A DNA stretch of 41,014 bases from Octopus sinensis (Eukaryota). The stretch covers positions 1 to 41,014 of the forward strand of contig NW_021829872.1 in assembly GCF_006345805.1 (NCBI RefSeq). The letters are read 5' to 3'. A program made the position numbers and the translations under genes. The notes beneath the pieces are model-generated. The model was not told where the DNA came from, made no database searches, and was given only the letters and a program-made list of their open reading frames with translations. Positions 22,461 to 41,014 of this stretch are shown piece after piece (positions within the stretch are counted from its first letter, which is position 1; the number at the start of each line of letters is the position of its first letter).

Positions 22461-22980
22461 TTTCATTCTCAAGATTATAAGATAAATATTTTACTAAAAT
22501 GAACAATAAAATAGTACAAAAATCAAAATAGAATATATAGAAATAAAGTTAATTTCAAAAATCAATATAATGGAGATTAATTAATTGACAAAATGAAAAA
22601 AAATTGCTTGCAAAATGAACTTTAGCCAAGATATTTTACCAGCAGTCGATTTAATTAATCTTCACAAAATAAAAAACCAAAAATTATAAAAAATAATACA
22701 TCGATTGCAAGAAATGATCAAATAAAAATTAGAAACAGAAATGCACAACAACAAAAGAACAGAATATGACGTGCTAAACACGTGTACAATTTATCGAATT
22801 AATTTAATAAGTTAAAAACATTTAAAAAATAAAATAGTTAAAATTAATATCTTCAGTCTGTTTGACATTAACAAAAAAATGTGAATTTAACCAATTAACA
22901 TCAATGACAACGTCCGTGTACAAACATACTGACTTTTTTCAGACAAAAAAGACAAAAAGAATTATCTAATTAATTACTTT
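22461..22980 (+). repeat. Dispersed AT-rich non-coding repeat, copy A
   Basis: Collinear with 32979-33515 over ~520 bp, with scattered substitutions and indels. Confidence 0.85.
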
Positions 22981-23439
22981 AATTAACTATACAATTTTGG
23001 ATCAAAAATAGAATAAAAAGATTTTCTAATCACATCCAACTGGATCTTTATATTGAAATTTGTGTAAATGCATGCCGTAATACTAGTTTGTGAGAAGACA
23101 CAGATTTACTTAAAACATATTTTACATACAAAGGATTTTCGAAGGCTCTGGACTTAGAAAATTAATTAGTTATTAGTTTCTTTTTATTAATAAAGTCATA
23201 TAAAGGATTCTAAAATAGGATTTCAAATAAGTATTCCTACAACTGTTGATACAAATGATTTTTTATTACATTTAACTGAAGCATATGTTCTAGCAAATAT
23301 TCCATTATATAATCTAAGGAATTCTGTCTCAATACATTTTTTTAACTATTGGATTCAAGTTACCTCAATTATAGACCATTAATTTGTTCGCCCAATGCAT
23401 CAATTGAATGTTAGATTGTGGATGGTAAAATTCGTTTTG

Positions 23440-24757
23440 TAAATGTTGAAAAAAACAGCCTCTACACAGCCGCCACCCACGACACAACTCTTGGACTCCA
23501 TGATCCGCTTAGTCGCACACAAAGCGTCGTGGATTGACCTCTCGATCTCATAACAACCAAAATAATTGGGTCTTCTGATTACAATGGAGGCAGCCAACCT
23601 CGCTTTTAATCTACAAATGGCATTATTGTGACACTACTCAGTAATAAGAATCAATTCATCATCGCCGACCCACTGCTGACTGACCTGCGCTGCATTCACA
23701 ACGAAAGACGACTAAAAGTCTCACTCTCCACCATGAAAGCCAAGGCCATATCATCCACCACAGTAGCTGAATTAATAAATAAACACTGGCACCTCCAGTT
23801 GCTTGGCTATCCGTTTGAGATCCGACTTCAATACTCCCTCACAGCCATAGCATTGGCAGACACAAACTTTTTCAGTCTTCCAGTTTGGAAGGATCATTCA
23901 CCATCACCTGCACTCCCAACTTGAGCTTAGACTTCATTAAACCAAAGCCTAGACAGGTGATCTTAGCATTGGCGACAGATTTGACCATATCTGGAAAAAA
24001 ATCACAGAGAACATCACCTACACTCCCAATTTTGCAGTTCACAGCATATCTGTTAACGAGGAATGACTCCCTCACATTCTCCGCATTTGCTTTGAGGATG
24101 TTGATTGCCTTGATGGGCACTCTTGTCTGCCCTCCCACATCCAATTTGACCTTCGAACAGGCTTCCACACAGATTGGGGCAAAAAAGTCAGCATTTCTAC
24201 AATTTAGACATTTCTTCATACGGCCCAATGACTTTACTCTGCATCGATGTCTTAGCACTGTTAATCAACCACGTCTTATTAATCTCATTCCCCGATATCA
24301 ACATCCTCTCCTCAATAAACTTACACGCCTCTCTACAGTATTGGGGAATAAAGGAGTATTACTAACAGGCCATTCTGTAGCTGTCGATTATTTAAGTTGG
24401 GTGGGCGTTCATGGCGATTTGTTTTCTGCGTTTTTGAAGAGTTCTGCTGTGATAATCACCCGGTTTGAGACGGAGAATTTATTTCCACTGATGTTGTGCT
24501 GTCCCCTACTTCTTGATCCTGGAGATTGGCTAATTGGACGAGGATTTTAGCAGCAGGATGTTCCACGTTCATTAATCCGAGTATTGTGGCTCCGTCGTGG
24601 TGATAGTGGAATCCTAACACCGTCAATGTGGAAAAATACTCCGACCATCATTTTATCAAGATCAATTGGGCCTAGACTGAATTTCAGAAAGATCCCGATT
24701 GCACATGCGGCTTTAACTATTGAGGTTTATTTGGGTTAAATTTTAATTAAATTAATA
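23440..24757 (-). pseudogene. TCP1: T-complex protein 1 subunit alpha (CCT1) pseudogene, exon 2 onward, 3'-truncated, with micro-introns
   Basis: Motifs SLGPIDLDKM, DGATILG..VEHPAAK, QEVGD.TTSV, INILKA, NAKITCL, KLKLGVQV..DP.KL, DDELIL, IERSIHDALC, GGGCVEA. Introns at 24614-24639, 24460-24485, 24333-24362, 24197-24221, 23991-24017, 23767-23792, 23611-23637. Frameshifts, in-frame TAA codons and a ~100-nt coding deletion after KLED. Confidence 0.93.
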
Positions 24758-25173
24758 CAGTCAAACCCGGTTAGTCGCCACTTTTTAAACAAAAAATCAA
24801 ATTTTATAAAAAGAATTCAGTTACTCGTCAGATTCAGTTACTCGCCACTATTTTTAATTTTTTAATTTAAATAAAATGGTTTTAATTTAAAACAATAAAA
24901 TAATTTCCACATTTATTAACCATGCGGAAGTGTACTCGGTTATCTTTGGAGGAAAAGCAAAAATTTTAAATTTCATTGATGAAAATAAGGGTCTTAGCTT
25001 AAATCGAATTGCCTCAATTTTCTCGATTATTTTGAAGAAAAAAATTTCCAGAAGATGCCTAAACGATCTAAAAATAAATAAAAGCGAAATAGCCTCTATT
25101 AATCCAATTTTGGGGGAAAAAGTCGTTTATCTTGCAGAAAATTTCCTGCACTATACCATTTCCTATACTAAAT

Positions 25174-25440
25174 GGGATCGGATTAACGTCAAACTATGTG
25201 GGATTAACGTCAAACAAAGTGGGATTAAGGTCAAACTATGTGGGATTATTAACGTCAAACTATGTGGGATTAACGTCAAACAAAGTGGGATTAACGTCAA
25301 ACAAAGTGGGATTAAGGTCAAACTATGTGGGATTAAGGTCAAACTATGTGGGATTAACGTCAAACAAAGTGGGATTAACGTGAAACAAAGTGGGATAAGG
25401 TCAAACTATGTGGGATTAACGTCAAACTAAATGGGATTAA
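25174..25440 (+). repeat. 21-bp tandem array (left TIR arm), ~12 units
   Basis: Units GGGATTAA(C/G)GTCAAAC(TAT/AAA)GT, with no spacers. Confidence 0.95.
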
Positions 25441-25942
25441 CACCAAAAAATTCTTTTTTTTAAAATTTTATGTTAACCATATTTAGTGTTGTCGGCAATA
25501 TTTCCCTGTATTCCAGAAATAAAGCCTACACAATCTTTAGACGTAATGGTTCATTCATGCTATCCACAATTATTTGTTCAAGTATCCGTGTTCGATACTC
25601 TTAATTGATAAGCCTTCCCTGTTGAATTCAAATTTTTGTTTTATTCCATGAAGGGTAATTGTGCTATCGTCTTCAATGCATGATATTAAAAAGTCGACAT
25701 GTTTTTGTCAAACTTTTTTCTATAATTTCCACCTCTCGTGTCAGGTTTAACTCCATCCCTTATCCAACGATATGCTGTTGTTCTCGAGATATTGAGTTCA
25801 AGTGCTGTTTTTTTCCAATCTCCACCTGATTCTGCAGCTGAAATTAAATGTATTTTATTTCTATGCATTTGATTTTTCTCTTCCAATGATTTACGTGGCA
25901 TTTTTATTTGCTGCGCCGAAATATAATATTTATAATAAACGT

Positions 25943-26200
25943 AATCCACTTAGTTTGACCTTAATCCCACATAGTTTGACCTTAATCCCACTTTGTTTGA
26001 CGTTAATCCCACATAGTTTGACCTTAATCCCACTTTGTTTGACGTTAATCCCACATAGTTTGACCTTAATCCCACTTTGTTTGACGTTAATCCCACATAG
26101 TTTGACCTTAATCCCACTTTGTTTGACGTAATCCCACATAGTTTGACCTTAATCCCACTTTGTTTGACGTTAATCCCACATAGTTTGACGTTAATCCCAT
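25943..26200 (-). repeat. 21-bp tandem array (right TIR arm), ~12 units, inverted relative to left arm
   Basis: Reverse complement of the same two unit variants, mostly in strict alternation. Confidence 0.95.
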
Positions 26201-27498
26201 TTAGTATAGGAAATGGTATAGAATCGGAAGTTGTATCTTGGCTCGAGAAAATAGAATTGGCTGGAGGATTTCTTGATGACAATGCAATTTTATTAAAAGC
26301 AAAAAGTATTGCAAGATTACATGGAATAACTGATTTTATGGGAAGCAATGGATGGCTTTCCAGATTCAAACAGAGAAACAATTTAAAATTAAGATTATTC
26401 CATGGAGAATCTGGCTCAATAACTGAAAATCTAAATGAGCAAATTGAAAAATTTCAAATAATTTTATCTACGAAATTACAACAATATGATCGTGAAAATG
26501 TTTACAATGGTGACGAAACTGGTGTTTTTTTTATAAAAATGTTCCTTCAAAAAGCATTTGCTCAAAAACTCGACCTGGAAATAAAATCCTTAAAGATCGG
26601 TTGAAACTTTATTAATCATTAGTAGATTTTCGCTATTTCTGTGTACAAATATGGTCGGGTCAGATAAGAAAATTCCATAATGACTGGGAAATATCAGAAA
26701 CCAAGATGTTTTAAAACATTAAAATTGAGAAATATTTAAAATACTGTCATTCCTCAAAAGCATGGATGACTCAAAAAATTTTTAATGAATGGCTTTATAA
26801 TTGGGATATTGAATTAAAAAAGAAAAATTCTTTTAATTATTGACCAATGACCATCACATAAAATATTAATCGAATTAAAATTTATTGAAATTCTTGTTCT
26901 TCCTCCGAACACCTCAACAATATTGCAGCCGATGGATCAAGGAATAATTCGTTCCTTTAAAACTAATTGCAATAAGTTCAAATTTAATGAAATTCTTCAG
27001 AAAATTAAATGCGGATATGGCATTCATGAATCATACAAAAATTTAAAACTTAAAGATGGAGTTTTATTTACCTATTTTGGTTGGAATGAAGTCATCAAAG
27101 AAACTATCAAAAATTGTTTCAGGCATGCTAAGTGGATTCCATATGAAGAGGAAATTCAATCTTCTAACTATACGATTGAGAAATATGAGGAGACAATAAA
27201 GCAATTGAATATTTTGGATCCAATGGAACAATCAGATTTTCTTGATTACACGTACACTGAAATAGACGAAGTGGAAGAATCCCTCAAAAACGATGATGAC
27301 GTAAATGAGAAATAAACACGTGGTATTTTTGAAGAGAAAACACCTGCGAATGAAATAAATCATGAAGATGCGTTTAAAATGTTGCAATATCAAAAAGTAC
27401 TATACTCAAGACGATATTTTTAATATTAACGCAATTCAAATGATCAATCAATTAATCGAAGATACAATGTTTACTAAAAAAACAATTAAATTAAATGT

Positions 27499-27613
27499 GG
27501 AGAAAAAAGACGGCGGCATTAGGCCTATTGCCGTCGGAAATGTTTTCCGCCGTTTGTTTGCAAAAGTCGGGTGCAAACTGGTAATTCCGTCTATTAGTGA
27601 CGAACTCCAGCCC
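27499..27613 (+). mobile_element. Short CRE-type RT fragment embedded in the Tigger 3' region
   Basis: EKKDGGIRPIAVGNVFRRLFAKVGCK..ELQP, visibly more GC-rich than the Tigger sequence on both sides. Confidence 0.8.
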
Positions 27614-27730
27614 ATTTCGTCTTTCAACATTTAATTTAATTATTTTTAATTTTGTGAATATAAAATTTGATTAAAATTTGATAGTGAGTATTCAGTTACT
27701 CGCCAAATACAGTTACTCGCCATTTTTGGC

Positions 27731-29024
27731 TTGGTCCCAAACATGTACACACATGGTCATCTTGTTATGAAGTACCAAACCTCCACATCCTGTTACATGA
27801 GGATATGGTTTTGGCAAACGTATACATGTGCACACAACAGGATCCAACTTACGCCAACCAAAGAGGAGGCGCTGTATGCAGTTGACCAGTACAGGGCTGG
27901 AAATATGGAGAAGTACAAGACTAATCCTGATTATCCGGATGACGTGTCAAGATTCTTTGTTGACGTGACCAACTACCTAGAGTCCCTTTCCGTCTCTGCC
28001 TGCAGGCACTGTCTTCAGCGGTGGTGTTTGCAATACAACAGCCTGTTACCTCAGCGACAAGTCCATATATGTCGAGCTGTACAAAGATCTCACAAGTACG
28101 ATCTCACTTTCCCACCTTGAAGATGACACGTATACAACGATATGGGACCAATCTTTCCACATCGACAAAACATGTTGCTTCCAATACTGCGGGAATTATT
28201 ATTGGTCCTCATATGAAGGATTGATGATAAACGCAAATGGAGATTGTCCAAGAATGTGCCTTGGTCGACCCCATGCGATGAAGCCAGGTTGGAAACTGCA
28301 AGGAGAAGAGCTATCCATTGACATGCAGTTTAGGGTGCATGACTGTGAGATTCTTCTGCTGAGGTAGGACTCACATGAAAGTAAATACGGCCGATCTCCA
28401 TTACTTGACACCGATCAACAAGTCGTACAGTCATGTGTAACTAAAATGGCCATGTATGAATGGATTGATCAGAATGGAATGCTACGTCCATGCTGCATAG
28501 GACCCTGGTGCATCAATCAACGCGATTGGACATCAGGGCTCGTCAAGCCATATTGCCTAGCAGACACCTTCTTTGTCAACGGAATATATGTTGACCGCGA
28601 TTTGAAGTTACGGATCCCATACGATTACACAGCTGATCAAGAGTATCATGCCGAGTTTAACATCTCTTCGTTTATGACGGATATTGTTCCATGATAAAAC
28701 TGCAATCAAAAAGACCATCGAAACCAATTACTCAGACCTATTTGGTCAATTGGGTCAAAAATAGCTGCAGCCGCGAAATTCGTTGGTGTCGTGGTTCTGC
28801 GTTTTATTGCCATTTATATTTTGTGGCCATACATCCACAGGAGGCACATTCATGACCGTGTTGAAAGATTACACAAAAGGGCATTGGGGAGGTATCAAAA
28901 ATGGAGAAGGAGAAGGTCAATTCAAGAGGTTGACGACCCTATTGAGCTGGCGTCCGGGTCAGAGCTCACAGTGCAGAGAGTTCTCAAAAATATTTCTGTA
29001 CCAGTCTCTTGTTCTTTACAATAA
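27731..29024 (+). pseudogene. Endogenous viral element: rhabdovirus-type (VSV-G-like class III) glycoprotein, 5'-truncated
   Basis: Ordered motifs comparable to VSV G: KYQTSTSCYMRIW..HNRIQLTPTKEE..DQYRAG..NPDYP (cf. KWVTTCDFRW..HSIRSFTPSVEQ..EQTKQG..NPGFP); VFSGGVCNTTAC (cf. FINGKCSNYIC); KTCCFQYCG..EGLMI (cf. KACKMQYCK..SGVWF); FVNGIYVDRDLKLRIPY (cf. GPNGVLRTSSGYKFPL); then a TM helix and a basic tail. At least two frameshifts and a premature stop. Confidence 0.85.
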
Positions 29025-29149
29025 AAAATTCTGTTCTGTTATTTGTCATTTTATAATATTTATCTTGACAAAATAGATTTTGAAATAGAATTCAAATATT
29101 TATTTTGAATTTTCTTCCAAGTCAGAAAGTATAACCACCTAGGCTCGGT

Positions 29150-31432
29150 ATGGTCTCACTTACTAGAAAAAGGTTGAAATTGCTCGACAACTAAAAAGTC
29201 ATTCACACAGAGTACTTGCTCAAAAATATGAAACGGGCATTGGCACAATTGCTCGAATAAAAAAAACGATTACGCCGCAAATAACCTGTGGGAACATTAT
29301 TCCAAATTTTCGGACTGAAACAAAAACTGACGATATTTTTAAAACATTGGATAGTAAAGTTCTCGACGTTTTTCAACAATTATGGCTCCAAAATATTCCA
29401 GTTTCAGGTCCTCTTGTCAAAAAAATTGGTAATTTTACGTTTTCTCACATTGTTTTAAGGTTTGAAAATTGCGGGTAAATTGAACATTACAAGCTTTAAA
29501 GCATCGAATGGTTGGTTAATGAATTTTTAAAAAAGACATGAAATCAAATTCAAAATCCTTAGCGGCGAAAAAACTCATGTAATCGTGCTGGAATTCAATC
29601 ATTTTTAAAAGTTTTCCATTAAAAAATTGATCAATTTGGAAAAAATAATGGATCACATAAAACAAACGCCCCCAGGGGCGTTTGTTTAATATGTGTGAAG
29701 TTAGGGGCGTTTGTTTAAAATGTGTTATATTGATGTTATAAAAAATTATATTATAATTTTTCCCATGTTTATTGTAGGTAGTACATACGAAACAACTTTA
29801 AGAGAACTTCTAGGAAGTGATACAATCGGGATAATATCATTTTTTAAGGCAAAAAGTCTAATGAAATCAAAAATGATGTGTGTTTACTGCAGAACAGAAA
29901 TGGTTTGGGTTTTCAAGCGTACCTATCTGACCAATATACTTGGAAATGTCAGAATCAAAACTGTTCAAAATACAAGACCACATTGTCAATACGAACAGGT
30001 TCTGTTTTGGCTACTTCGAGTATAAGTCTCAAAACATGGTTAGATATTTTGTATAGGTGGAGCAATGAAGAATCAATTGTTATGATTAAAAAATCACTGA
30101 CCTTATCATCTCTAACACTTATAAAAATTTTTAAAACCATTAGAAAATGTATTAGCAGACACTTTGAAAGTAATCCCGTAAAATTATGTGGAGAAAATGT
30201 AGTCTGCCAAATCGATGAAAGTCTCTTTTGTCATAAACAAAGTACCATCGGAGTAGACTTGCTAATTCTCAAGTGTGGGTATTCGGTATTGTTGATACCT
30301 CATTTTCACCGGCAAGAGGTTTTATGCGAGTGGTTCCAAATCGATCAGCGGCCACTTTAAACCAATTATCTGTGAAGTAATTCTGCCAGGATCAATTATC
30401 CATAGTGATGAATGGAGGGCCTATTCCAATTTAAATGTTTTGGATATGACCACGCTACTGTAAACCACTCAATTAACTTTATTGAACCAACCATTGGTGT
30501 TCATGCCAAACATGTGGAGTCCTATTGGAATAAAAACAAATTGCGTTGTAAGAAAATGAAAGGTGTCAAAAAAATTTTTACAAGACTACCTAAACAAATT
30601 TATGTGGTGTGACAACGTAATTGGTGATCCTTTTGAAAAGTTAATGGAGCTTTTGAAAAATTATTATGTTGTTCAATAAACTTGTTTCTGAAGTATAGTA
30701 TTTATTTATAAATTTGATTTTTAGTTTTACATTACTTTAATGTTTTCGTCGAATGTTTGACATGTATAAATTTAGTGGCGTTTGTTTAATATGTGTAAAT
30801 TTAGGGGCGTTTGTTTAATATGTGTAAATTTGGGGGCGTTTGTTTAATGTGATCCAAAATAATATCTTTAACATTGATGAAACTTGTCTTTTTATAAAAA
30901 AGACCCCAAAAAATCATTCGTACAAAAAAATAAAAAAGCTTCAGGGTCTAAAATGAATAAGGAAAAAATTTCTTTGCTCTTTTGCTGCAGTTATTCAGGC
31001 CAAAAATTTGATCCTTTAATAATCGGGAAATTTAAAAATCCCAGATGTTTCAGAAATTTTAACCCTGAGGATTATGGTGCTATGTACTCATCTTCCAAAA
31101 ATGGCTGTATGACAAGAGATATTTTTATTCAATGGTTATTCTTAGTGAATGAACGAATGAAAATGGAAAAGAGAAAAATTTTAATAATTCTTGATAACGC
31201 TTCGTGTCATGAAAATAAATCGCTCTCAAATATCGAATTGCTGTTTTTACCCAAAAATACAACTCCAATTCTTCAACCATTGGATAATTGGATAATCAAA
31301 GCTTTTAAAGATAATTATTCGAAGGCGTTAATTGAATTTATTTGTTGAAAAGATGAAGAAGATTTTTACTGCGACTTACTTAAAAAAATTAATTTACGCC
31401 AATCATTGATAATAGTATCGAAATCGTGGCAA
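29150..31432 (+). mobile_element. Tigger/pogo transposase remnant, interrupted by Merlin, both TIRs absent
   Basis: HTH region (..EIARQLKS..LAQKYETGIGTIARIKK; FKASNGWL). The reading KIDQFGKNN|IFNIDET is continuous across the Merlin site. Then KEKISLLFCCS..GKFKNPRCF..LDNASCH..LQPLD.WIIKAFK. Confidence 0.85.
29650..30855 (+). mobile_element. Merlin (IS1016/ISXO2-like) DNA transposon
   Basis: 24-bp TIRs GGATCACAT(A/T)AAACAAACGCCCCC and an 8-bp TSD AAAATAAT (29642-29649, 30856-30863), with ~30-bp ggggcgtttgtttaatatgtgt subterminal repeats. Transposase motifs WKCQNQNC..SIRTGS, CQIDESLF, IHSDEWRAY, VNHS..VESYW; frameshifted. Confidence 0.95.
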
Positions 31433-31596
31433 ATTCAGATGATCCCGATTGCACATGCGGCTTTAACTATTGAGGTTTATCTGGGTTGAATTTTAATTAA
31501 ATTAATAATTAGATGATAACGGTTTGTTTCTCTAACAGAATTTCCAGAATTTCTTTCACCAAATAAAAGTAACGGATTTCCCCAAACAGCACTCAT
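31433..31596 (-). pseudogene. TCP1: CCT1 exon 1 (31521-31596), intron 1 (31467-31520) and start of exon 2
   Basis: ATG at 31594-31596: MSAVWGNPLLLFGERNSGNSVRETN + phase-1 GT..AG intron (54 nt) + (L)KAACAIG, cf. TCP1 MEGPLSVFGDRSTGETIRSQNV|MAAASI. Confidence 0.88.
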
Positions 31597-31744
31597 GTAG
31601 CCTAAGAACTAAAACGTGTTTTATATATTTTTTGAATTACATTTATTTACAAAAATTGTATTATGTCGCGTCCCATGGTGGTAACACTTCCCGAAAACAT
31701 TTTTATATGTTTATAAAACGTGCGTCGAACCATTTCTTGGAAAA

Positions 31745-32050
31745 CGTATAATTCTTCATACGAACAAAGGGAAGGAATTTGTCAACGAAAGGATTTCCCG
31801 ATTGTGTGATAAGTACAGGATAAAACACGTGAGAGGTCATACAAGGTGCCCTTGGGTGCAGGGGCAGATAGAAAAATTAAACCAATCCTTGAAATATATG
31901 TTTTCCTCCACCTGTTTGTCTGAGAACCTCAAATATAAATGAATTTGAATAAAAGACAGAACAAAGAGTTCATATAACTCAACGGTACATTCCACTATGT
32001 CGTTTGCATCGTTCAGAGTTATGTTTGGAGAAAATGCTGATCAGTCGGCA
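31745..32050 (+). mobile_element. Ginger-like integrase catalytic remnant
   Basis: IILHTNKGKEFVNE..KHVRGHTRCPWVQGQIEKLNQSLKY. An upstream TGTCGCG at 31664 resembles the TIR start of the 19377 element. Confidence 0.7.
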
Positions 32051-32149
32051 AACATAGCGAAGAAGAACTTGTTCTCTTATTCGCAAAATTCATGTATTAA
32101 TCCATGTGGATGAAAAAAATGACGTAGAGAATTACATGGCAAAACGGCA

Positions 32150-32405
32150 GTTCATTCGATCCGTGAACTTATTGAATCCTCCGAGGCGCCAATCATGGTT
32201 TAACTAGACGTCTCGAACGCCTTCAATTCCATCAGACGTGACCACCTACTGGAGTGCTGCCGCGAACTGGTTCCGTTCGCTTATCCCCTCGTACATCTTT
32301 CATACGCTTCCCCAAGTGTCCTTATGTTCGGTGATGTTCCTATCTCTTCGTCTACAGGGCTCCAGCAGGGCGATCCACTGGGTCCTGTTCTTTTTTCTTG
32401 TGCGT
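32150..32405 (+). mobile_element. CRE-type RT fragment
   Basis: LDVSNAFNSIRRDHLLECCRELVPFAYPLVHLSYASPSVLMFGD.PISSSTGLQQGDPLGPVLFS. Confidence 0.85.
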
Positions 32406-32409
32406 CATG

Positions 32410-32540
32410 GAACGCAGACTATCTTTCCGAACCCCGAAGATGATATCAAAGAAAGTGATGTTAAATGGGCCGTAAATGAATTGCCTTGCAACAAGGCGCC
32501 TGGCCCGGACGATATTTCAAGCGAGATGCTTAAGGTGAGC
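32410..32540 (+). mobile_element. APE-type LINE (RTE-like) RT N-terminal fragment
   Basis: IKESDVKWAVNELPCNKAPGPDDISSEMLK (KAPGPD motif). Confidence 0.7.
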
Positions 32541-32974
32541 TTTTTATATGAACTATTAACGAATATTTCTTGATGTTCTAACAAATCGATTAAATATGCA
32601 AGTTTGTGCTTATTGAAATTCGTTTTGAAATTTTTTATGACTCCCAGGTCCATTAGCTGGACCAAGCCTGTACTATTTCGCGGTATAAACATGATTTCAA
32701 TATTAGACAAATCTTCTGGTATGGAATGGGAAAAACAGTTATCCAGAATAAGCAGAATTTGTTTTCTCTGTAATTTTAGATTCATATCAAAGTTTATTAG
32801 CCAATCTATGAAGATTTTCCCAGTCATCTAAGCAGGCTGGGAGCTATAAAATTTGTGGCCAATCTGAGAACTGGCCATTTTGCAGAGTTTTTTCAATTTT
32901 CCAGAGGTAAATTGTTAAAAATGGCCAATTTGAGAGGTGGCCAATTAGAGAGGGGCCAATTTGAGAGGGTTGAG
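32540..32974 (-). mobile_element. Tigger/pogo remnant with one terminus
   Basis: MTGKIFIDWL..LLILDNCFSH..MFIPRNST..QLMDLGVIKNFK. Terminus TA|CTCAACCCTCTCAAATTGGCC at 32974, with repeated ggccaatttgagag motifs. Confidence 0.8.
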
Positions 32975-32978
32975 TAAA

Positions 32979-33515
32979 TTTCATTCCCAAGAATCTTGAG
33001 TCAAGATTATAAAGATATATATTTTACTAAAATGAACAATAAAATACTACAAAAATAAAAATAGAATATATAGAAATTAAGTTAATTCAAAAAATCAATA
33101 TTAATGGAGATTAATTAATTGATAAAATGAAAAAAATTCGCTTGCAAAATAAACTTTATCCAAGATATTTTGCTAGTAGTCAATTTAATTAATCTTCACA
33201 AAAATAGAAAAGAAAAAATATTATAAAAATAAAGCATTGATTTCAATAAATGATCAAATAAAATTAAAAACAAAAATGCACAACAAAACAACAAAATATG
33301 ACGTGCTAAACACGTGAACAATTTTTTGTATTTAATTCAATAACTCAAAAACATTTAGAAAATAGAATAAATAAAATTTAATATTTTCAGTCTGTTTGAC
33401 ATTAGCAGAAAATATGAATTCAACCAATTAACATCAATGAAGACGTCCGATGTAAAAACATACCAATTTCTTTTCAGACGAAAAGGACAAAGAAAATCAT
33501 GTAATTAATGACTTT
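32979..33515 (+). repeat. Dispersed AT-rich non-coding repeat, copy B
   Basis: Direct-orientation homologue of 22461-22980. Confidence 0.85.
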
Positions 33516-33569
33516 GAAAAAACAAACATAATAACATTTAAAGAGAGTCAATACAGATTAGGAAATTAT

Positions 33570-34215
33570 GACTCGCCAAAAGCTGGCTGCACCGCGGATA
33601 ACAAACGAATTGCCTCGCAAGATTGCTATAGATACCCTCTGGTACAGCCACCTGGTTTCCCGGTGGTCATTGGTCTTCTTTCCAATAAGCTTCCCAATTA
33701 CCGAAAGAATCATCTCCCGCAGGCCCAATCACGCCGCTCGTCTCCACAGTAATTGGAACAATGCGGGATGCGTCTGGAATCGACGCGTACTTGCTCCGTT
33801 TGTTTTTTCTTCGGCCTGGTAAGACGCGAAGCCAGAACACGACGCAGACGGAGTAACGGTTCCCCGAGAGAAAAGATGTCAGCACAGGTTATATCCCAAA
33901 CGAGACATTCTCTTTGCTGTGTGGGAATACAGTCATTCCGTCCGGACGCTTGCCGTCTCCGCGATTAAGACCAATGGGCTTCAAAACCGAAGGGATGCCT
34001 ACGATATTAAGCCCCAGTTTGACGACGTTGTTCAAACTGGAGTGTCTCGAGGTACGTCCACAACTTGACCGACAAGAAATAGAATGGAGGTTATCCAAGA
34101 CTATCAACTGGCCACACATGCATGGGTGAGGGTGGCAAAGAATGATTCCGACTCGTAAACAGGTATGAGTCGAACTAACTCATCATCCAAAAGTATCCAG
34201 CCGAGGATAGTGATA
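33570..34215 (-). mobile_element. CRE-clade 3' part (zinc knuckle + REL)
   Basis: HACMCGQL..DNLHSISC..GRTSRHSSLNNVVK..LKPIGLNRGDGKRPDGMTVFP, PITVETSGVIG. Confidence 0.88.
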
Positions 34216-34389
34216 CGGGATTTAACCAGTTTAACCAGTGTGGTTGCAGTGGAGGGAAATCGAGACTGAAAGAAAATTCAGTTAGTTCGAAATGTTCAGA
34301 AGAGGGAAAAAGAACAGAATTCACAAAATTTCTCGATTCCGAGAGGAGAGCAAAAATTATTTTAGCAACATTCTCCCTGATCTGATTTC

Positions 34390-35140
34390 CGCGTCAGTTC
34401 GGCGTTGGTGTCCGAGATGCCTGTGAGGCATCTGTCTACGGACTGAGGAAACTGGCCACAAAGCCAACTCCAACATCTTATTTCTCGTTAAGCTGGATGT
34501 GTGCAACGCCTTTAACAGTGTTTGTAGGGATCACATCCTGGAAGTCATTTACGCCCGTTGATCGACCGATTGTTTACCTATCTTACGCGTGTCCCTAAAT
34601 CTTATTTGGGAAAAATTTGCTAATTTCAGCGTCTAGTCTAGTGTTCAGCAAAGGGATCCATTATGGTCTCTCCTATTTTCCCTCGCAGTGAACCATATTG
34701 CCCAAAGACTGTCAAGCCCGCTCAATTTCTGGTATCTTAAAAATATCACCTTGTGTGGTTCGCTTGAATCTATAGGCAACGATGTTGATGATATTATTTA
34801 GGGTTTTTGCCAAATCAGGCTATCCCTTAATGGCTCCAAGTCGGAGATCACTCGGCTTTCTTCTGACTACTCTCTATTTGATCAGACCTTCGCATCCCTT
34901 TCTGAGAAGGTTGTCGGTCTCAGATCGACAGATCTGACAAATCTGGTTGTCCTTGGTTTGACAATCTCCAATGGAAGAATGTCCACTGCTATTTCAGACA
35001 TTAAACGTGAGTTAATTCTGACCCTAGAACGAATCTCCGACTTGAAGTACACGTAGGGCGATTTCCTGTTAAAAACTATCTTTGTACCCGGCGTCTCACC
35101 TACCTACTCGTTTCATCCGCATGTTTTCCGGAATCCGACA
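34390..35140 (+). mobile_element. CRE-clade RT domain (opposite orientation to the adjacent 3' part)
   Basis: QFGVGVRDACEASV, VKLDVCNAFNSV.RD, VQQRDPLWSPLFSL, LNFWYLKNITL.G, LSLNGSKSEI. Confidence 0.85.
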
Positions 35141-35199
35141 TGTTGTCTGACCTGTAAGTCTCTCTAGCAAGAAATAGATGGTTTGTTTATAAACTCTCC

Positions 35200-36320: not shown

Positions 36321-36534
36321 ATGTCCCCTTGTAATGTCCCCTTTGAGTCAATGCGTGACGATATTAGGGCCCACTACTTAACCATGGTAAAGGACGCCCT
36401 CAAGACGTTTCTGCGGCCTGATTATCCTTCTTTCTTGTTAGGGCATGGGCGGGATGGTTTCAATATGTCTTCGAATAAATCAAACTTTAAGAAGGATTCT
36501 GTGCAAAAGGCCAAACCTAAGACTTCGTGTAAAC
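36321..36534 (+). pseudogene. 5' part of a putative RNA-virus capsid-like EVE (split by hAT)
   Basis: Open frame ..HYLTMVKDALKTFLRPDYPSFLLGHGRDGFNMSSNKSNFKKDSVQKAKPKTSCK. It continues at 38729 once the hAT and one TSD are removed. Confidence 0.4.
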
Positions 36535-38728
36535 CAGAGGTTTCCAAGCTTTTTTTTACGCGCCTCCCTTAGAGAAAAAGTACAATCTTGCGCCTCCCTT
36601 TATATTCCATAATATAATACAATTATTATTTTATCAAAAACAATTTTTTAAAACAAAAAGTTAATGAGATAATTTTTTTTCCATCTTGGCGCAAAGTTTT
36701 TCAAATCTTGGTGTCATCGCAGAGAGTGCTACTCTTAGCTCATTAGTCACTACTAAACGAGTTCGATATTTAGATTTAATTGCAGCTAGTGCAGAAAATC
36801 CAGTTTCGCATAAATATGAAGTAGCAAATGGCAACAAAACTTTCATTGCTTTATTCGACAAAATTTCATATTCCGTTCTTACATTCAACCAAAAAGAAAT
36901 TAGCGGTTCTCTCTCAAATTTTTGTTTCAATAATGTATCGCATGACAATTCTATCAATTTTTTTTTCAAAAGTTGTCAATGCAAATTGATTATCTTCTTC
37001 ATCAATAATGGATTCTGTATCCATTCGAACATTTTACAGTCGAGATCTTTAAAATAGTGAGCAAAATGCTTCAACAAACAATCCAAATGTTCAGCAAATA
37101 TGTCTTTGTTTGCTTCAATGTTCACTATGGCGCAAAAGGTGTTTAAAAGTGGAAACATGTCATAGATATTTTTTTTGTATATTTGATTTCCATAATACCA
37201 ATTTTTTCATAAATGCTTTTATTTTGTCCTTTTGAGAGAATAAATGTAGTTGTGGTCCCTGCATTGATTTATTCAATATACTCAATTTCCCAAAAATGTC
37301 AACTAAATAGGCAAATTTGACAATAAAGTCATCATCCCTGAACAACTTTGCATCTTCAATATCATTTTCATCAAGAAAATCTGCAACTTGATCTTTGAGT
37401 TCAAACACCCTTCTAATCACTTTTGCACGAGATAGCCAGCGTACCTCACAATAGTATAAAAGCGATGTATATTTTGAATCCATATCTTCACACAGCTTTG
37501 CAAAAAGCTTAGCTCTTAAAGGACTGTGTTTTATGTAGTTTATAACTTTTGTAATTTGCGCAAAAATATCGTTCAGTTCTGGACTCATATTCTTTGAGAC
37601 AAGTGCTGATCTGTGCAGCATGCAGTGCGTCCAGATAATTTCTGGTGCTCTGTTTTTTACAAGAGCTTGAAGACCAGATTTATTTCCTGACATTGACTGT
37701 GCTCCGTCTGTACAAAGTCCAACACAATTGATCCATTCTATGTTATTTTCTTCAAAAAAAGTATCAATTATATTAAAAATTTCATTGGCCGTGCTCCTTC
37801 CAGGAAATGGTTTGCAGAATAATAGATCTTCTATTATTGTACTTTCTTCAGCATATCTGACATATGCAATTAAATGTGCATTTTTATTTATGTCAGCTCC
37901 CTCATCAACTTGTATAGCAAATTTACAGTTACGTAGTCGAGAACCAACTGATCACAAAGATCTTCAGATATGTCATCAATTCTTCTAGCGACTGTGTTAT
38001 CAGCAAGCGGTATTTGCTGTAATTGTTTTGCATAGGATTCGCCAAACATTGCTTCAACCATATCGATAGCTGCTGGCAAAACTAGAGTTTCTCCGATATT
38101 GTGCGGTTTCTTGCATTTTGCAATCCTGTAAGAAACTTTGTACGATACTAGTAAAGCATTTGAAGAGACAGAAACAAGTTTTTTTAACGATTTCGTTTGG
38201 TTATCAAACTCTTCTAATTTTCTTTTAAAAAATTCTTCAGACTTATGGACATGTTCAGAATGCATCGTTTCAAAATGTCTTCTTAATTTGCATGGCCTCA
38301 TACTATCTGCTGCAAGTGTTTTGAGGCAAAGCAAATAGAGGGGTTTTTCCATAGAATCAACAAAGATACGTGTGAATCCTAACAATAAGTAAGATGGAAA
38401 GTATTTTCTTGTCTTTGGAGTGGTATTGATTATATTCCAATCTTTTGATTTTTTGAACCATCATCATCAAAATCTTTATTATTCGTGAATTTTCTTTTGC
38501 AACCACTCAAGAATTTATTCATGTGTTAAAATTATTTAATTGTCTAATAAATTAAATAAATTTTTGAAAAAATATAATTTTTAAATTAATAACTCTTATT
38601 ATCGGAATAGTCACGTTTTTTACATAGATATAATTTTCTAAAAATGTTTCTGAAATACTTTTCGCGCCTCCCTTGACACGAGTCAACGCCTCCCTAGGGA
38701 GGCGCGCCTCCCCATTTGGAAACCTCTG
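36535..38728 (-). mobile_element. Buster/Charlie-type hAT transposon, complete (copy 1)
   Basis: 13-bp perfect TIRs CAGAGGTTTCCAA, an 8-bp TSD GTGTAAAC (36527-36534, 38729-38736; TA at positions 4-5) and gcgcctcc subterminal repeats. Transposase ATG 38522 to stop 36661, with SMRPCKLRRH, CTDGA, WTHCMLHR, VRWLSR, LLPFATSYLCETGFS. Frameshifts in homopolymers. Confidence 0.97.
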
Positions 38729-39072
38729 GTGTAAACCAAAGAAAACTCAACTACGACAACGTCGCGTTCGCATCTCCTCAAACGTCTGCCGTTAGAGCCC
38801 TGACCCAGCGCGTCAATACCTTGAGTCTTCAACTCAAGCGTGCTGAGGGGACCCCGGATCGTGTTTTGAAACAGCAACGCGTGTTCATTTCACAACCGGA
38901 TGTTCCCCCAAATTTGGAGGCTGGGAGCATCATTGATGACATTCCAGTTAGTTTTTCTGCGTGCCACGACGCTTAGGTTTCGGCCCAAGTCTTATCATAT
39001 GACTTTTGGAGGCCAAAGTTCGTACGTTACCACGTTCGGACTGGGCTTTTCACCTCATCGAATGGTCTATAT
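38729..39072 (+). pseudogene. 3' part of putative +ssRNA virus jelly-roll capsid-like EVE
   Basis: Basic arm KPKKTQLRQRRVR, then SAVRALTQRVNTLSLQL..LEAGSIIDDIPVS..A*VSAQVLSYDFWRPKFVRYHVRTGLFTSSNG. The pattern resembles the S-domain start of noda/tombus-like capsids. One shift and one stop. Confidence 0.5.
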
Positions 39073-41014
39073 CAGAGGTTTCCAAGCTTTTTTTCGCGCC
39101 TCCCTTAGAGAAAAAGTACAATCTTGCGCCTCCCTTTATATTCCATAATATAATACAATTATTATTTTATCAAAAACAATTTTTTAAAACAAAAAGTTAA
39201 TGAGATAATTTTTTTCCATCTTGGCGCAAAGTTTTTCAAATCTTGGTGTCATCGCAGAGAGTGCTACTCTTAGCTCATTAGTCACTACTAAACGAGTTCG
39301 ATATTTAGATTTAATTGCAGCTAGTGCAGAAAATCCAGTTTCGCATAAATATGAAGTAGCAAATGGCAACAAAACTTTCATTGCTTTATTCGACAAAATT
39401 TCATATTCCGTTCTTACATTCAACCAAAAAGAAATTAGCGGTTCTCTCTCAAATTTTTGTTTCAATAATGTATCGCATGACAATTCTATCAATTTTTCTT
39501 TTTCAAAAGTTGTCAATGCAAATTGATTATCTTCTTCATCAATAAATGGATTCTGTATCCATTCGAACATTTTACAGTCGAGATCTTTAAAATAGTGAGC
39601 AAAATGCTTCAACAAACAATCCAAATGTTCAGCAAATATGTCTTTGTTTGCTTCAATGTTCACTATGGCGCAAAAGGTGTTTAAAAGTGGAAACATGTCA
39701 TAGATATTTTTTTGTATATTTGATTTCCATAATACCAATTTTTTCATAAATGCTTTTATTTTGTCCTTTTGAGAGAATAAATGTAGTTGTGGTCCCTGCA
39801 TTGATTTATTCAATATACTCAATTTCCCAAAAATGTCAACTAAATAGGCAAATTTGACAATAAAGTCATCATCCCTGAACAACTTTGCATCTTCAATATC
39901 ATTTTCATCAAGAAAATCTGCAACTTGATCTTTGAGTTCAAACACCCTTCTAATCACTTTTGCACGAGATAGCCAGCGTACCTCACAATAGTATAAAAGC
40001 GATGTATATTTTGAATCCATATCTTCACACAGCTTTGCAAAAAGCTTAGCTCTTAAAGGACTGTGTTTTATGTAGTTTATAACTTTTGTAATTTGCGCAA
40101 AAATATCGTTCAGTTCTGGACTCATATTCTTTGAGACAAATGCTGATCTGTGCAGCATGCAGTGCGTCCAGATAATTTCTGGTGCTCTGTTTTTTACAAG
40201 AGCTTGAAGACCAGATTTATTCCTGACATTGACTGTGCTCCGTCTGTACAAAGTCCAACACAATTGATCCATTCTATGTTATTTTCTTCAAAAAAAGTAT
40301 CAATTATATTAAAAATTTCATTGGCCGTGCTCCTTCCAGGAAATGGTTTGCAGAATAATAGATCTTCTATTATTGTACTTTCTTCAGCATATCTGACATA
40401 TGCAATTAAATGTGCATTTTTATTTATGTCAGCTCCCTCATCAACTTGTATAGCAAATTTACAGTTACGTAGTCGAGAAACCAACTGATCACAAAGATCT
40501 TCAGATATGTCATCAATTCTTCTAGCGACTGTGTTATCAGCAAGCGGTATTTGCTGTAATTGTTTTGCATAGGATTCGCCAAACATTGCTTCAACCATAT
40601 CGATAGCTGCTGGCAAAACTAGAGTTTCTCCGATATTGTGCGGTTTCTTGCATTTTGCAATCCTGTAAGAAACTTTGTACGATACTAGTAAAGCATTTGA
40701 AGAGACAGAAACAAGTTTTTTTAACGATTTCGTTTGGTTATCAAACTCTTCTAATTTTCTTTTAAAAATTTCTTCAGACTTATGGACATGTTCAGAATGC
40801 ATCGTTTCAAAATGTCTTCTTAATTTGCATGGCCTCATACTATCTGCTGCAAGTGTTTTGAGGCAAAGCAAATAGAGGGGTTTTTCCATAGAATCAACAA
40901 AGATACGTGTGAATCCTAACAATAAGTAAGATGGAAAGTATTTTCTTGTCTTTGGAGTGGTATTGATTATATTCCAATCATTTTGATTTTTTGAACCATC
41001 ATCAAAATCTTTAT
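39073..41014 (-). mobile_element. Buster-type hAT transposon (copy 2), runs off window end
   Basis: Same TIR CAGAGGTTTCCAAG at 39073, preceded by GTCTATAT (TA at positions 4-5). Nearly identical to copy 1; ORFs 39184-40272 and 40194-40922. Confidence 0.97.

What the first reader, a model, noticed from the sequence alone, without database searches (positions are those of the whole stretch)
23440..31596. CCT1 pseudogene with 25-30 nt introns at ancestral animal TCP1 positions
Seen: seven short interruptions of 26, 26, 30, 25, 27, 26 and 27 nt, six with GT..AG ends (one decayed to GA..GG), plus a 54-nt intron 1. Removing them gives exons of 76, 77, 128, 97, 111, 179, (198, deleted) and 129 nt. 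From recall, human TCP1 coding exons are 64, 86, 129, 98, 111, 182, 127, 176, 124.. nt with introns in the same phases (1,0,0,2,2,1,..1,2). Eight positions coincide. Established: introns this short occur in only a few lineages (e.g. dicyemids, myxozoans, some ciliates and other reduced parasites). Inference: the host kept the ancestral intron positions but shrank each intron, in a genome that is otherwise expanded by TEs.
Basis: partly seen in the sequence, partly recalled or inferred. Interest (0 to 1): 0.75.

Follow-up and report, generated by a model that had tools for sequence, protein, structure and literature searches.

The report
Dicyemid TCP1 pseudogene in octopus assembly
The tiny-intron CCT1/TCP1 pseudogene is real, but it shows a known trait of dicyemids (kidney parasites of octopuses), and the contig is filed in GenBank as Octopus sinensis, so it is most likely parasite DNA contaminating the host's reference assembly.

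Summary
On the minus strand lies a broken TCP1 (CCT alpha) gene copy with interruptions of 54, 26, 26, 30, 25, 27, 26 and 27 nt. Seven have GT..AG ends and one has decayed to GA..GG. All eight fall in the same codon and phase as introns of the annotated TCP1 genes of a bivalve and a teleost. Those two genes share all 11 of their introns.

The window is identical over the 10,821 bases compared, and equal in length, to contig VCDQ01011669.1 of the Octopus sinensis assembly GCA_006345805.1. It does not look like octopus DNA. The pseudo-protein is only 56-57% identical to any bilaterian TCP1. None of the window's TE families matched a cephalopod other than O. sinensis. A pogo element nested inside the pseudogene carries its own 31-nt intron.

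Other "O. sinensis" contigs of 509 and 688 kb share the window's hAT element at about 99% identity. They hold intact, compact PLK, UTP23 and ODC genes with roughly 20-27-nt introns.

O. sinensis is the host of Dicyema japonicum, whose roughly 26-27-nt introns at conserved positions are already published. The best reading is a dicyemid contig contaminating the octopus assembly. The intron biology is known. The contamination is a useful data-quality finding. Parasite-to-host transfer is not formally excluded.

The parts
31521..31596 (-). TCP1 pseudogene exon 1 (76 nt, ATG at 31596; MSAVWGNPLLLFGERNSGNSVRETN + 1 nt)
   Evidence: Aligns to Solemya TCP1 residues 7-24.
31467..31520 (-). Intron 1 (54 nt, GT..AG, phase 1)
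   Evidence: Same codon and phase as Solemya intron 1. It maps to fish residue 28, which is the codon of fish intron 1.
31441..31466 (-). First 26 nt of exon 2, in the copy still attached to exon 1 and intron 1. It belongs to the 67-nt duplication 31441-31507.
   Evidence: family D13: 24691-24757 and 31441-31507 are 97% identical.
24758..31440 (.). A 6.7-kb nest of decayed mobile elements splitting exon 2. It holds a pogo-like element with HTH_Tnp_Tc5 and DDE_1 domains (about 24758-27730), which itself contains an inverted-repeat element built of 21-nt tandem repeats (25160-26210). It also holds a rhabdovirus-G-like fragment (27731 to about 29024). A second pogo-like element (about 29130-31432) is interrupted by an IS1595/ISXO2-like element (about 29660-30860).
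24717..24757 (-). Second copy of the last 41 nt of intron 1, part of the 67-nt duplication
24640..24716 (-). Exon 2 (77 nt)
24614..24639 (-). Intron 2 (26 nt, GT..AG, phase 0)
24486..24613 (-). Exon 3 (128 nt; 1-nt deletion near 24599 relative to the 129-nt ancestral exon)
24460..24485 (-). Intron 3 (26 nt, both splice sites decayed: GA..GG, phase 0)
24363..24459 (-). Exon 4 (97 nt; 1-nt deletion near 24420; in-frame TAA at 24394-24392; the codon spanning the exon 4/5 junction is also TAA)
24333..24362 (-). Intron 4 (30 nt, GT..AG, phase 2)
24222..24332 (-). Exon 5 (111 nt, same length as in the bivalve and the fish)
24197..24221 (-). Intron 5 (25 nt, GT..AG, phase 2)
24018..24196 (-). Exon 6 (179 nt, against 182 in the references; one codon shorter)
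23991..24017 (-). Intron 6 (27 nt, GT..AG, phase 1)
23793..23990 (-). Composite 198-nt segment. It joins the 5' part of exon 7 (reference residues 228-264) to the 3' part of exon 8 (residues 300-327). Reference residues 265-299 and intron 7 are deleted at 23878/23875. Further frameshifts lie in the exon-8 part.
23767..23792 (-). Intron 8 (26 nt, GT..AG, phase 1)
23638..23766 (-). Exon 9 (129 nt against 124 ancestral; a frame change near 23730 and in-frame stops)
23611..23637 (-). Intron 9 (27 nt, GT..AG, phase 2)
23427..23610 (-). Exon 10, nearly complete. Homology ends about 4 codons before the position of ancestral intron 10. Exons 11 and 12 were not found anywhere in the window.
29429..29459 (+). 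A 31-nt GT..AG segment inside the second pogo-like element. Removing it restores one continuous HTH_Tnp_Tc5 domain, so this is a tiny intron in a transposon that sits within the pseudogene.
   Evidence: profile positions 4-65 of 66 matched in a single stretch across the junction, 40.4 bits.
36530..41014 (-). Two tandem copies of a hAT (FAM200/ZBED5/Buster-type) element. They are the link to the other contigs, being 98.6-99.5% identical to copies on O. sinensis-labelled contigs of 71, 509, 668 and 688 kb.

Best explanation
The window is a contig of a dicyemid mesozoan, most likely Dicyema japonicum or another dicyemid of the East Asian common octopus. It was assembled together with host DNA and deposited as Octopus sinensis contig VCDQ01011669.1.

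In a TE-only stretch of that genome lies an unprocessed, DNA-level partial duplicate of the chaperonin gene TCP1/CCT1, covering exons 1-10. It keeps the normal gene architecture of the lineage: ancestral bilaterian intron positions and phases, with each intron shrunk to 25-30 nt (54 nt for intron 1).

The copy is dead. Exon 2 is split by a 6.7-kb nest of transposons. Intron 7 and 35 codons are deleted. There are several 1-nt frameshifts and at least two TAA stops. One intron has lost both splice sites. The last two exons are absent.

Shown here: the anatomy, the 8/8 intron-position match, the identity of the deposited record, and intact tiny-intron genes on linked contigs.

Inferred: the dicyemid assignment (from the intron signature, the host association, and GC and repeat content), that the contig is free parasite DNA rather than DNA integrated in the octopus genome, and that a functional parent copy exists elsewhere in the parasite genome.
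For: 1. Anatomy and intron positions.

2. Record identity: a member of the window's hAT protein cluster lies on an O. sinensis contig of exactly 41,014 bp. The DNA fetched for it (contig positions 30194-41014) is base-for-base the reverse complement of window 30194-41014.

3. Not an octopus gene: the pseudo-TCP1 is 56-57% identical to every bilaterian tested, including the bivalve. Those proteins are 74-79% identical to one another. No closer protein was found in the 5.8-billion-cluster protein database searched.

4. The surrounding DNA also carries the tiny-intron signature: a 31-nt GT..AG intron in the pogo element nested in exon 2.

5. The same genome carries intact tiny-intron genes.
- The 688-kb contig VCDQ01004311.1 has the hAT at 99.0-99.4% identity. 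It also has a 589-aa PLK gene at L004 1443-3400 that needs at least 8 introns of 21-25 nt. That gene gives a full Pkinase domain (positions 1-263 of 263) and two POLO boxes.
- The same contig holds a compact UTP23 gene.
- The 509-kb contig VCDQ01001009.1 has a 390-aa ODC gene. Its 26-nt intron restores the PFYAVKCN motif, and the protein covers Orn_Arg_deC_N positions 2-247 of 247.
- On that contig NCBI's own HLH model is 263 aa within 857 nt.

6. The window shares older repeats (72-95% identity) with all four sampled contigs.

7. No cephalopod other than O. sinensis appears among the listed hAT hits. No cephalopod at all appears among hits to five other window TE ORFs.

8. Literature:
- O. 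sinensis is the host from which D. japonicum was isolated. That genome has GC 36.7% and 48.9% repeats (PMC6736024). The loci here have GC 33.7-38.7%.
- Dicyema sp. has a median intron length of 27 bp. Ogino et al. [quoted passage not shown]
- Among the 51 animal genomes surveyed in PMC13644364, only myxobolid myxozoans and D. japonicum have such introns.
Against: - No dicyemid sequence could be compared directly. The D. japonicum assembly (RDEW00000000) is not in any searchable collection here.
- No dicyemid TCP1 appeared in the protein database.
- Exact-protein look-ups of two window ORFs found no other record.
- A distance tree only places the pseudo-protein on a very long branch at the base of the sampled animals, next to a rotifer. 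That is uninformative.
- Contigs of 0.5-0.7 Mb are large for a contaminant.
- I could not obtain verified octopus DNA to show that the window's repeats are absent from it.
Confidence: 0.85

Rival explanations
1. Parasite-to-host horizontal transfer. The contig is genuine octopus chromosomal DNA. The TCP1 fragment, perhaps together with the pogo and hAT elements, entered the octopus germline from a dicyemid and then decayed.
For: The record is filed as O. sinensis and passed into RefSeq. The hAT family sits on contigs as long as 688 kb. Host-parasite contact is lifelong.
Against: Nothing in the 41 kb looks cephalopod. The large hAT-bearing contigs themselves carry intact, densely packed tiny-intron housekeeping genes, which is a parasite genome and not an insertion. 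Dicyemids live in the renal sac, away from the germline (PMC6736024). Contamination has a much higher prior probability.
Confidence: 0.04
2. The contig comes from a different tiny-intron organism associated with the sequenced octopus, for example a myxobolid-like myxozoan or an undescribed parasite, rather than from a dicyemid.
For: Myxobolids have median intron lengths of 22-27 bp at conserved positions (PMC13644364). The TCP1 tree cannot tell a cnidarian from a spiralian origin, because no cnidarian sequence was available.
Against: PMC13644364 describes myxosporean hosts as annelids, fish and other vertebrates, while O. sinensis is the host from which D. japonicum was isolated. Thelohanellus kitauei proteins are, from my own knowledge, in NCBI, yet no myxozoan appears among the best 120 TCP1 hits. 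The GC of 34-39% and the heavy TE load fit D. japonicum (36.7% GC, 49% repeats). They fit Henneguya salminicola less well (29% GC; myxozoans are described as having relatively few TEs). A ciliate is unlikely: the intact PLK gene reads through with the standard code and ends in TAA, the contigs are TE-rich, and the intron positions are metazoan.
Confidence: 0.08
3. It is not a pseudogene. It is the functional TCP1 of the parasite, made to look broken by long-read assembly errors.
For: Two of the frameshifts lie in short A runs, which is a typical long-read error pattern. A contaminant may also have had low coverage.
Against: Base-calling errors cannot produce the larger lesions. These are a 6.7-kb TE nest in exon 2 flanked by a 67-nt duplication, loss of 35 codons plus intron 7, TAA substitutions, decay of both splice sites of intron 3, and the absence of exons 11-12. 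The PLK and ODC genes on sister contigs read through 1.2-1.8 kb without a single frameshift, so base accuracy there is good.
Confidence: 0.02

Closest known systems
Dicyemid nuclear genes with about 26-27-bp spliceosomal introns in a conserved exon/intron structure (Ogino et al. 2010, Gene 449:70, as cited in PMC6543705; Lu et al. 2019, PMC6736024; Zverkov et al. 2019, PMC6543705)
   Same: Intron lengths of 25-30 nt (median 26.5 here against a published median of 27). GT..AG ends with little further consensus. Positions and phases identical to those of other bilaterians. A repeat-rich genomic background with about 35% GC. The octopus host.
   Different: This copy is a dead, truncated duplicate rather than an expressed gene. 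It is deposited under the host's name. Sequence identity to a dicyemid assembly was not testable here.
Ultra-short introns of myxobolid myxozoans: Henneguya salminicola with a median of 27 bp, Thelohanellus kitauei and Myxobolus rasmusseni with 22 bp (Hadjez et al. 2026, PMC13644364)
   Same: Introns under 30 bp at conserved metazoan positions, with reduced splice-site motifs, in a parasite.
   Different: The lineage and hosts differ (cnidarians of fish and annelids). The published H. salminicola genome has lower GC (29%), and myxozoans are described as having relatively few TEs. No myxozoan protein appeared among the best TCP1 hits.
Unprocessed (duplicated) pseudogenes
   Same: Introns are retained. 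The copy is partial and carries frameshifts, nonsense codons, an internal deletion and TE insertions.
   Different: The parent gene was not available, so age and origin cannot be measured. A 67-nt duplication flanking the TE nest is not a normal target-site duplication.
Parasite or symbiont contigs left in host genome assemblies
   Same: Contigs with foreign gene architecture and no host-like sequence, annotated under the host's name. An example is XP_029654378.1, 'zinc finger BED domain-containing protein 5-like [Octopus sinensis]'.
   Different: The contaminant here is an animal with a TE-rich genome. Composition-based screens would not flag it, because its GC is similar to the host's.

Membership tests
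TCP1/CCT alpha subunit (group II chaperonin, Pfam Cpn60_TCP1) | Significant match to the Cpn60_TCP1 profile, with best database hits being the alpha subunit | tested here: met
   260.9 bits, E = 2.8e-77. The named hits among the best 120 are mostly labelled T-complex protein 1 subunit alpha, with E down to 6e-122.
TCP1/CCT alpha subunit (group II chaperonin, Pfam Cpn60_TCP1) | An intact reading frame encoding the full protein of about 555 aa | tested here: not met
   At least two TAA stops, several frameshifts, a 35-codon deletion, a TE nest in exon 2, and no exons 11-12. It is a pseudogene.
Dicyemid-type ultra-short introns in a conserved gene structure | Most introns shorter than about 30 nt | tested here: met
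   Lengths 26, 26, 30, 25, 27, 26 and 27 nt, plus 54 nt for intron 1.
Dicyemid-type ultra-short introns in a conserved gene structure | Canonical GT..AG termini | tested here: met
   Seven of 8. Intron 3 reads GA..GG, which is consistent with decay in a pseudogene.
Dicyemid-type ultra-short introns in a conserved gene structure | Positions and phases shared with orthologues of other animals | tested here: met
   8 of 8 match a bivalve and a teleost, which themselves share 11 of 11 introns.
Dicyemid-type ultra-short introns in a conserved gene structure | The segments are actually removed from RNA | not testable with these tools
   No transcript data are available. Support is indirect: intact PLK and ODC reading frames on linked contigs exist only if 19-27-nt GT..AG segments are removed.
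Dicyemida (taxonomic source of the contig) | High nucleotide identity to a dicyemid genome or transcriptome | not testable with these tools
   No dicyemid assembly is in the searchable collections. Exact-protein look-ups found nothing.
Dicyemida (taxonomic source of the contig) | Genome-wide signature: compact genes with introns under 30 nt, about 37% GC, about half repeats, and an octopus host | tested here: met
   (compact genes). (GC 33.7-38.7%). (record from the O. sinensis assembly). (literature).
Horizontal gene transfer from parasite to host | The foreign segment is flanked on the same molecule by unambiguous host sequence | tested here: not met
   The whole 41-kb contig is TE sequence. 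No hit to a cephalopod other than the O. sinensis-labelled contigs themselves was found. The linked contigs look like parasite genome throughout the sampled parts.
Unprocessed pseudogene | Retains the parent's introns and carries disabling lesions | tested here: met
Unprocessed pseudogene | A functional parent copy exists in the same genome | not testable with these tools
   No close TCP1 was found in the protein database. The rest of the assembly cannot be searched by DNA.

The most novel reading that the evidence does not exclude
The contig, or at least its hAT and pogo elements and the TCP1 fragment, is truly integrated in the Octopus sinensis germline. That would be DNA transfer from a dicyemid kidney parasite into its cephalopod host, or an actively shared hAT family moving between the two.
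Probability: 0.05. Interest if true: 0.8.

Novelty: new member of a known kind. Interest (0 to 1): 0.3.

Why it matters
The biology is already published for dicyemids, and since 2026 for myxobolids. Animal introns can shrink to about 26 nt while keeping their ancestral positions. This locus adds one more example. It also shows that the tiny introns persist at full length in a decaying duplicate, and that a transposon in the same genome (a pogo element) carries a 31-nt intron.

The practical point is larger. The RefSeq-annotated Octopus sinensis assembly GCA_006345805.1 appears to contain parasite contigs up to at least 688 kb. Their genes are unannotated, as with PLK and UTP23. Or they are labelled as octopus proteins, as with the FAM200A/ZBED5-like proteins, an HLH protein and a fused ODC model.

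Such contigs can seed false claims of horizontal transfer, false octopus-specific genes and false TE inventories. GC-based screening would not catch them. They could also serve as a long-read resource for dicyemid genomics.

Tried and rejected
1. Exact-protein look-ups of two window hAT ORFs, to find the same locus in other assemblies or read sets. Nothing was on record.

2. A generic scan for 15-70-nt GT..AG segments that bridge two open frames, compared with seven control dinucleotide pairs, in the window and five loci. There was no enrichment. The method is too noisy for TE-rich DNA, so I used homology-guided reconstruction of single genes instead.

3. A suspected tiny intron at the end of a second hAT ORF in L003. 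It turned out to be a plain frameshift.

4. A neighbour-joining tree of TCP1. It gave a long unresolved branch at the base of the sampled animals. No cnidarian, flatworm or dicyemid sequences were available, so it cannot place the lineage.

5. A chimeric query of five window TE ORFs. It gave only 7 weak hits, the best at 54% and unnamed. This is useful only as evidence that cephalopod relatives are absent.

6. An Rfam scan of the window and four linked loci. No match.

7. The supplements of the 2026 intron paper are not held.

8. An alternative genetic code as the explanation for the two TAA codons. Rejected: the intact PLK gene on a linked contig has no in-frame TAA and ends with TAA.

9. An origin from the octopus's own TCP1. 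Rejected on identity: 57% to a bivalve, where bilaterian orthologues are 74-79% identical to each other.

10. A processed retrocopy. Rejected because the introns are retained.

Full report
**1. What is in the sequence**

Region 23427-31596 carries recognisable pieces of the chaperonin subunit TCP1 (CCT alpha) on the minus strand. Once the short interruptions are located, the segments are as follows.

| Feature | Coordinates | Length (nt) | Note |
|---|---|---|---|
| Exon 1 | 31596-31521 | 76 | ATG at 31596 |
| Intron 1 | 31520-31467 | 54 | GT..AG |
| Exon 2 | 24716-24640 | 77 | |
| Intron 2 | 24639-24614 | 26 | GT..AG |
| Exon 3 | 24613-24486 | 128 | |
| Intron 3 | 24485-24460 | 26 | GA..GG |
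| Exon 4 | 24459-24363 | 97 | |
| Intron 4 | 24362-24333 | 30 | GT..AG |
| Exon 5 | 24332-24222 | 111 | |
| Intron 5 | 24221-24197 | 25 | GT..AG |
| Exon 6 | 24196-24018 | 179 | |
| Intron 6 | 24017-23991 | 27 | GT..AG |
| Composite segment | 23990-23793 | 198 | parts of exons 7 and 8 |
| Intron 8 | 23792-23767 | 26 | GT..AG |
| Exon 9 | 23766-23638 | 129 | |
| Intron 9 | 23637-23611 | 27 | GT..AG |
| Exon 10 | from 23610 | | homology to about 23427 |

Seven of the eight interruptions begin with GT and end with AG. Intron 3 reads GA..GG. The joined translation scores 260.9 bits on Pfam Cpn60_TCP1. Its best database hits are TCP1 alpha subunits of animals, with E down to 6e-122.

**2. Are the positions ancestral?**

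I aligned two annotated proteins exactly to their own genomic loci.

- The bivalve Solemya velum has coding exons of 73, 86, 129, 98, 111, 182, 127, 176, 124, 193, 164 and 208 nt.
- The teleost Onychostoma macrolepis has 82, 86, 129, 98, 111, 182, 127, 176, 124, 193, 164 and 211 nt.
- Intron phases in both are 1,0,0,2,2,1,2,1,2,0,2.

A mollusc and a vertebrate therefore share all 11 introns. The recalled human numbers agree with these sizes.

In a global alignment of the conceptual window protein, each of the eight window introns falls in the same codon and phase as Solemya introns 1-6, 8 and 9. They also fall on the fish intron codons 28, 56, 99, 132, 169, 230, 331 and 372. Intron 7 cannot be scored because it lies inside a deletion. 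Introns 10 and 11 lie beyond the end of the copy.

**3. It is a pseudogene**

The lesions are these.

- Exon 2 is split by 6.7 kb of nested mobile elements (24758-31440). The nest is flanked by a 67-nt duplication made of the last 41 nt of intron 1 plus the first 26 nt of exon 2 (24691-24757 and 31441-31507, 97% identical).
- Exons 3 and 4 each have a 1-nt deletion.
- There is a TAA at 24394-24392, and the codon spanning the exon 4/5 junction is also TAA.
- Reference residues 265-299 and intron 7 are lost at 23878/23875.
- The exon 8 and exon 9 parts carry further frame changes and stops.
- Both splice sites of intron 3 have decayed.
- No trace of exons 11-12 exists anywhere in the window.

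Retained introns show that the copy is a DNA-level duplicate and not a retrocopy. Assembly error cannot explain the large lesions. Genes on sister contigs read through without any frameshift.

**4. Where the window comes from**

A search with the window's best-preserved transposase, a hAT of the FAM200/ZBED5/Buster type present as two tandem copies at 36530-41014, found a protein 99% identical and labelled Octopus sinensis. Its 90% cluster has eight members, all O. sinensis RefSeq proteins. One of them lies on a contig of exactly 41,014 bp. I fetched that place. It is contig VCDQ01011669.1 of GCA_006345805.1, positions 30194-41014. The fetched DNA is base-for-base the reverse complement of the same window coordinates. 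On that 10.8-kb identity and the equal length, the window is taken to be a whole contig of the Octopus sinensis assembly.

**5. Octopus DNA or parasite DNA?**

Several results argue against octopus.

a) The pseudo-TCP1 is 56-57% identical to every bilaterian TCP1 tested, including the bivalve. Those proteins are 74-79% identical to each other and 63% identical to a fungal one. It is an animal-type gene on a very long branch and not a decayed mollusc gene.

b) The listed hAT hits include no cephalopod other than O. sinensis. The next relatives are arthropod proteins at 55-69% and unnamed metagenome and transcriptome proteins at 66-73%. A combined query of five other TE ORFs from the window (pogo DDE, IS1595-like, an LTR-element ORF, a reverse transcriptase and a glycoprotein fragment) found only seven weak hits, none from a cephalopod.

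c) The second pogo-like element of the nest that splits exon 2 contains a 31-nt GT..AG segment (29429-29459). Removing it restores a single uninterrupted HTH_Tnp_Tc5 domain, with profile positions 4-65 of 66 matched. The DNA around the pseudogene therefore also carries the tiny-intron signature.

d) The decisive result comes from other contigs that carry the same hAT at 98.6-99.5% identity.

- On the 688-kb contig VCDQ01004311.1 (locus L004), positions 1443-3400 encode an intact 589-aa polo-like kinase. The frame is open only if at least eight GT..AG segments of 21-25 nt are removed, and further in-frame segments of about 27 nt are likely introns too. The product covers the Pkinase profile 1-263 of 263 in one stretch and has two POLO boxes.
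- A compact UTP23/Fcf1 gene lies 13 kb away on the same contig.
- On the 509-kb contig VCDQ01001009.1 (locus L007), an intact 390-aa ornithine decarboxylase needs introns of 26, 25 and about 19 nt. The 26-nt intron restores the PFYAVKCN motif. The protein covers Orn_Arg_deC_N 2-247 of 247.
- NCBI's own model of a neighbouring HLH gene is 263 aa within 857 nt.

The PLK and UTP23 genes were not called at all in the record's annotation.

e) Besides the hAT, the window shares older repeats at 72-95% identity with all four sampled contigs. They therefore belong to one genome.

That genome has densely packed genes with 20-27-nt introns. This is not a 2.7-Gb cephalopod genome.

**6. Which organism?**

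The published lineages with such introns among animals are dicyemids and myxobolid myxozoans (PMC13644364).

- In Dicyema sp. the median intron is 27 bp, and two thirds of introns are under 30 bp. Ogino et al. [quoted passage not shown]
- D. japonicum was isolated from the renal sacs of Octopus sinensis. Its genome has 36.7% GC and 48.9% repeats (PMC6736024).
- The window has 33.7% GC and the linked loci 34.7-38.7%.
- Henneguya salminicola has 29% GC. Myxozoans are described as relatively TE-poor, with annelids, fish and other vertebrates as hosts.
- A ciliate source is unlikely. The intact PLK gene reads through with the standard code and ends in TAA, the contigs are TE-rich, and the intron positions are metazoan.

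I therefore assign the contig to a dicyemid by inference. I could not compare it with a dicyemid assembly, because none is in the collections available here.

**7. Mechanism**

Shown:
- The gene structure.
- The lesions.
- The nesting order: TCP1 exon 2 was broken, and the inserted elements have themselves decayed.

Inferred:
- A segment covering the 5' flank (under about 100 nt) through exon 10 of the parasite's TCP1 was duplicated at the DNA level into a repeat-rich region. It lost function and then accumulated insertions, a deletion and point lesions.
- Its introns stayed at 25-30 nt because nothing removes or expands them quickly.

The 67-nt duplication flanking the nest is not a transposon target-site duplication of normal size and remains unexplained. 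Direct repeats at 22479-22916 and 33012-33449 (72-93% identical) bracket the whole pseudogene. I did not resolve what they are.

**8. Comparison with what is known, and novelty**

The intron phenomenon is already known for dicyemids. This locus is another instance, in pseudogene form. Three things are new.

- This contig, and at least two large contigs of the RefSeq-annotated octopus assembly, appear to be parasite DNA.
- Several RefSeq and UniProt entries labelled O. sinensis are then parasite or parasite-TE proteins.
- A pogo-type transposon in this genome carries a 31-nt intron.

The reading that would be truly novel is parasite-to-host DNA transfer. It is not formally excluded, but nothing here positively supports it. 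I give it about 5%.

**9. Verdict**

- Observation: confirmed.
- Best explanation: a dicyemid TCP1 pseudogene on a contaminant contig, confidence about 0.85.
- Novelty: new member of a known kind.
- Interest: about 0.3, mainly for the data-quality consequence.

Noticed in passing
window 1-41014 (= GCA_006345805.1 contig VCDQ01011669.1): The window matches a contig of the RefSeq-annotated Octopus sinensis assembly in length and over the 10.8 kb compared. RefSeq proteins such as XP_029654378.1 ('zinc finger BED domain-containing protein 5-like [Octopus sinensis]') are modelled on its hAT copies. If the contig is dicyemid, those entries carry the wrong organism name.
   Followed up: yes
L004 1443-3400 and 16162-16907 (VCDQ01004311.1, 688 kb): Intact polo-like kinase and UTP23 genes with 20-27-nt introns. 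Neither is called in the record's annotation. The same 22-kb stretch also holds a DNAJC8-like ORF (recognised by eye only) and an intact copy of the hAT with a 473-aa ORF.
   Followed up: partly
L007 14474-15716 and 6215-7071 (VCDQ01001009.1, 509 kb): An intact ornithine decarboxylase gene with tiny introns. NCBI's model appears to fuse it with a neighbouring DSHCT-domain (MTR4-like) gene. An HLH gene is modelled as 263 aa within 857 nt.
   Followed up: partly
window 27731 to about 29024 (+): A decayed glycoprotein gene. The first piece matches the Pfam rhabdovirus spike glycoprotein fusion domain (E = 1.9e-5), and a hydrophobic, transmembrane-like stretch lies near the end. GC is about 44%, above the flanks. 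It may be an endogenous viral fragment or the envelope gene of a retroelement. I did not reconstruct it.
   Followed up: partly
window 24691-24757 and 31441-31507: A 67-nt duplication (97% identical) of intron 1 / exon 2 sequence flanks the 6.7-kb TE nest. It is far longer than a pogo target-site duplication, and the right-hand end of the nest is a truncated transposase ORF rather than a terminal repeat. The mechanism is unexplained.
   Followed up: partly
window 25160-26210: A foldback-like insertion inside the first pogo element. Two arms of about 12 tandem 21-nt units in inverted orientation (up to 149 nt, 93% complementary) surround a short stretch with a helix-turn-helix-like ORF on the minus strand.
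   Followed up: no
window 29660-30860: An IS1595/ISXO2-like transposase remnant (DDE_Tnp_IS1595, E = 3.6e-19 after correcting frameshifts by eye). It is bounded by 29-nt repeats (29674-29732 and 30745-30861) and is inserted in the second pogo element.
   Followed up: partly
window 36530-41014: The contig ends in two tandem hAT copies with a period of about 2,537 nt. Long stretches are 100% identical, and the second copy is cut by the contig end. This may be a real tandem or an assembly artefact at a contig end.
   Followed up: no
window 22479-22916 and 33012-33449: AT-rich direct repeats (72-93% identical, about 10.5 kb apart) bracket the whole pseudogene and its flanking TE fragments. Their nature (long terminal repeats, or two copies of a non-autonomous element) was not determined.
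   Followed up: no
window 13451-13531: A short array of degenerate CCCTAA-like units (18- and 36-nt periods). It may be an interstitial telomere-like repeat.
   Followed up: no
L008 14019-20374 (Onychostoma macrolepis CM022807.1): The fish TCP1 locus used as a yardstick contains a local duplication of exons 6-9. Two exact copies of several exons are present, and the gene is split into several overlapping gene calls. This is either an assembly duplication or a real tandem.
   Followed up: no
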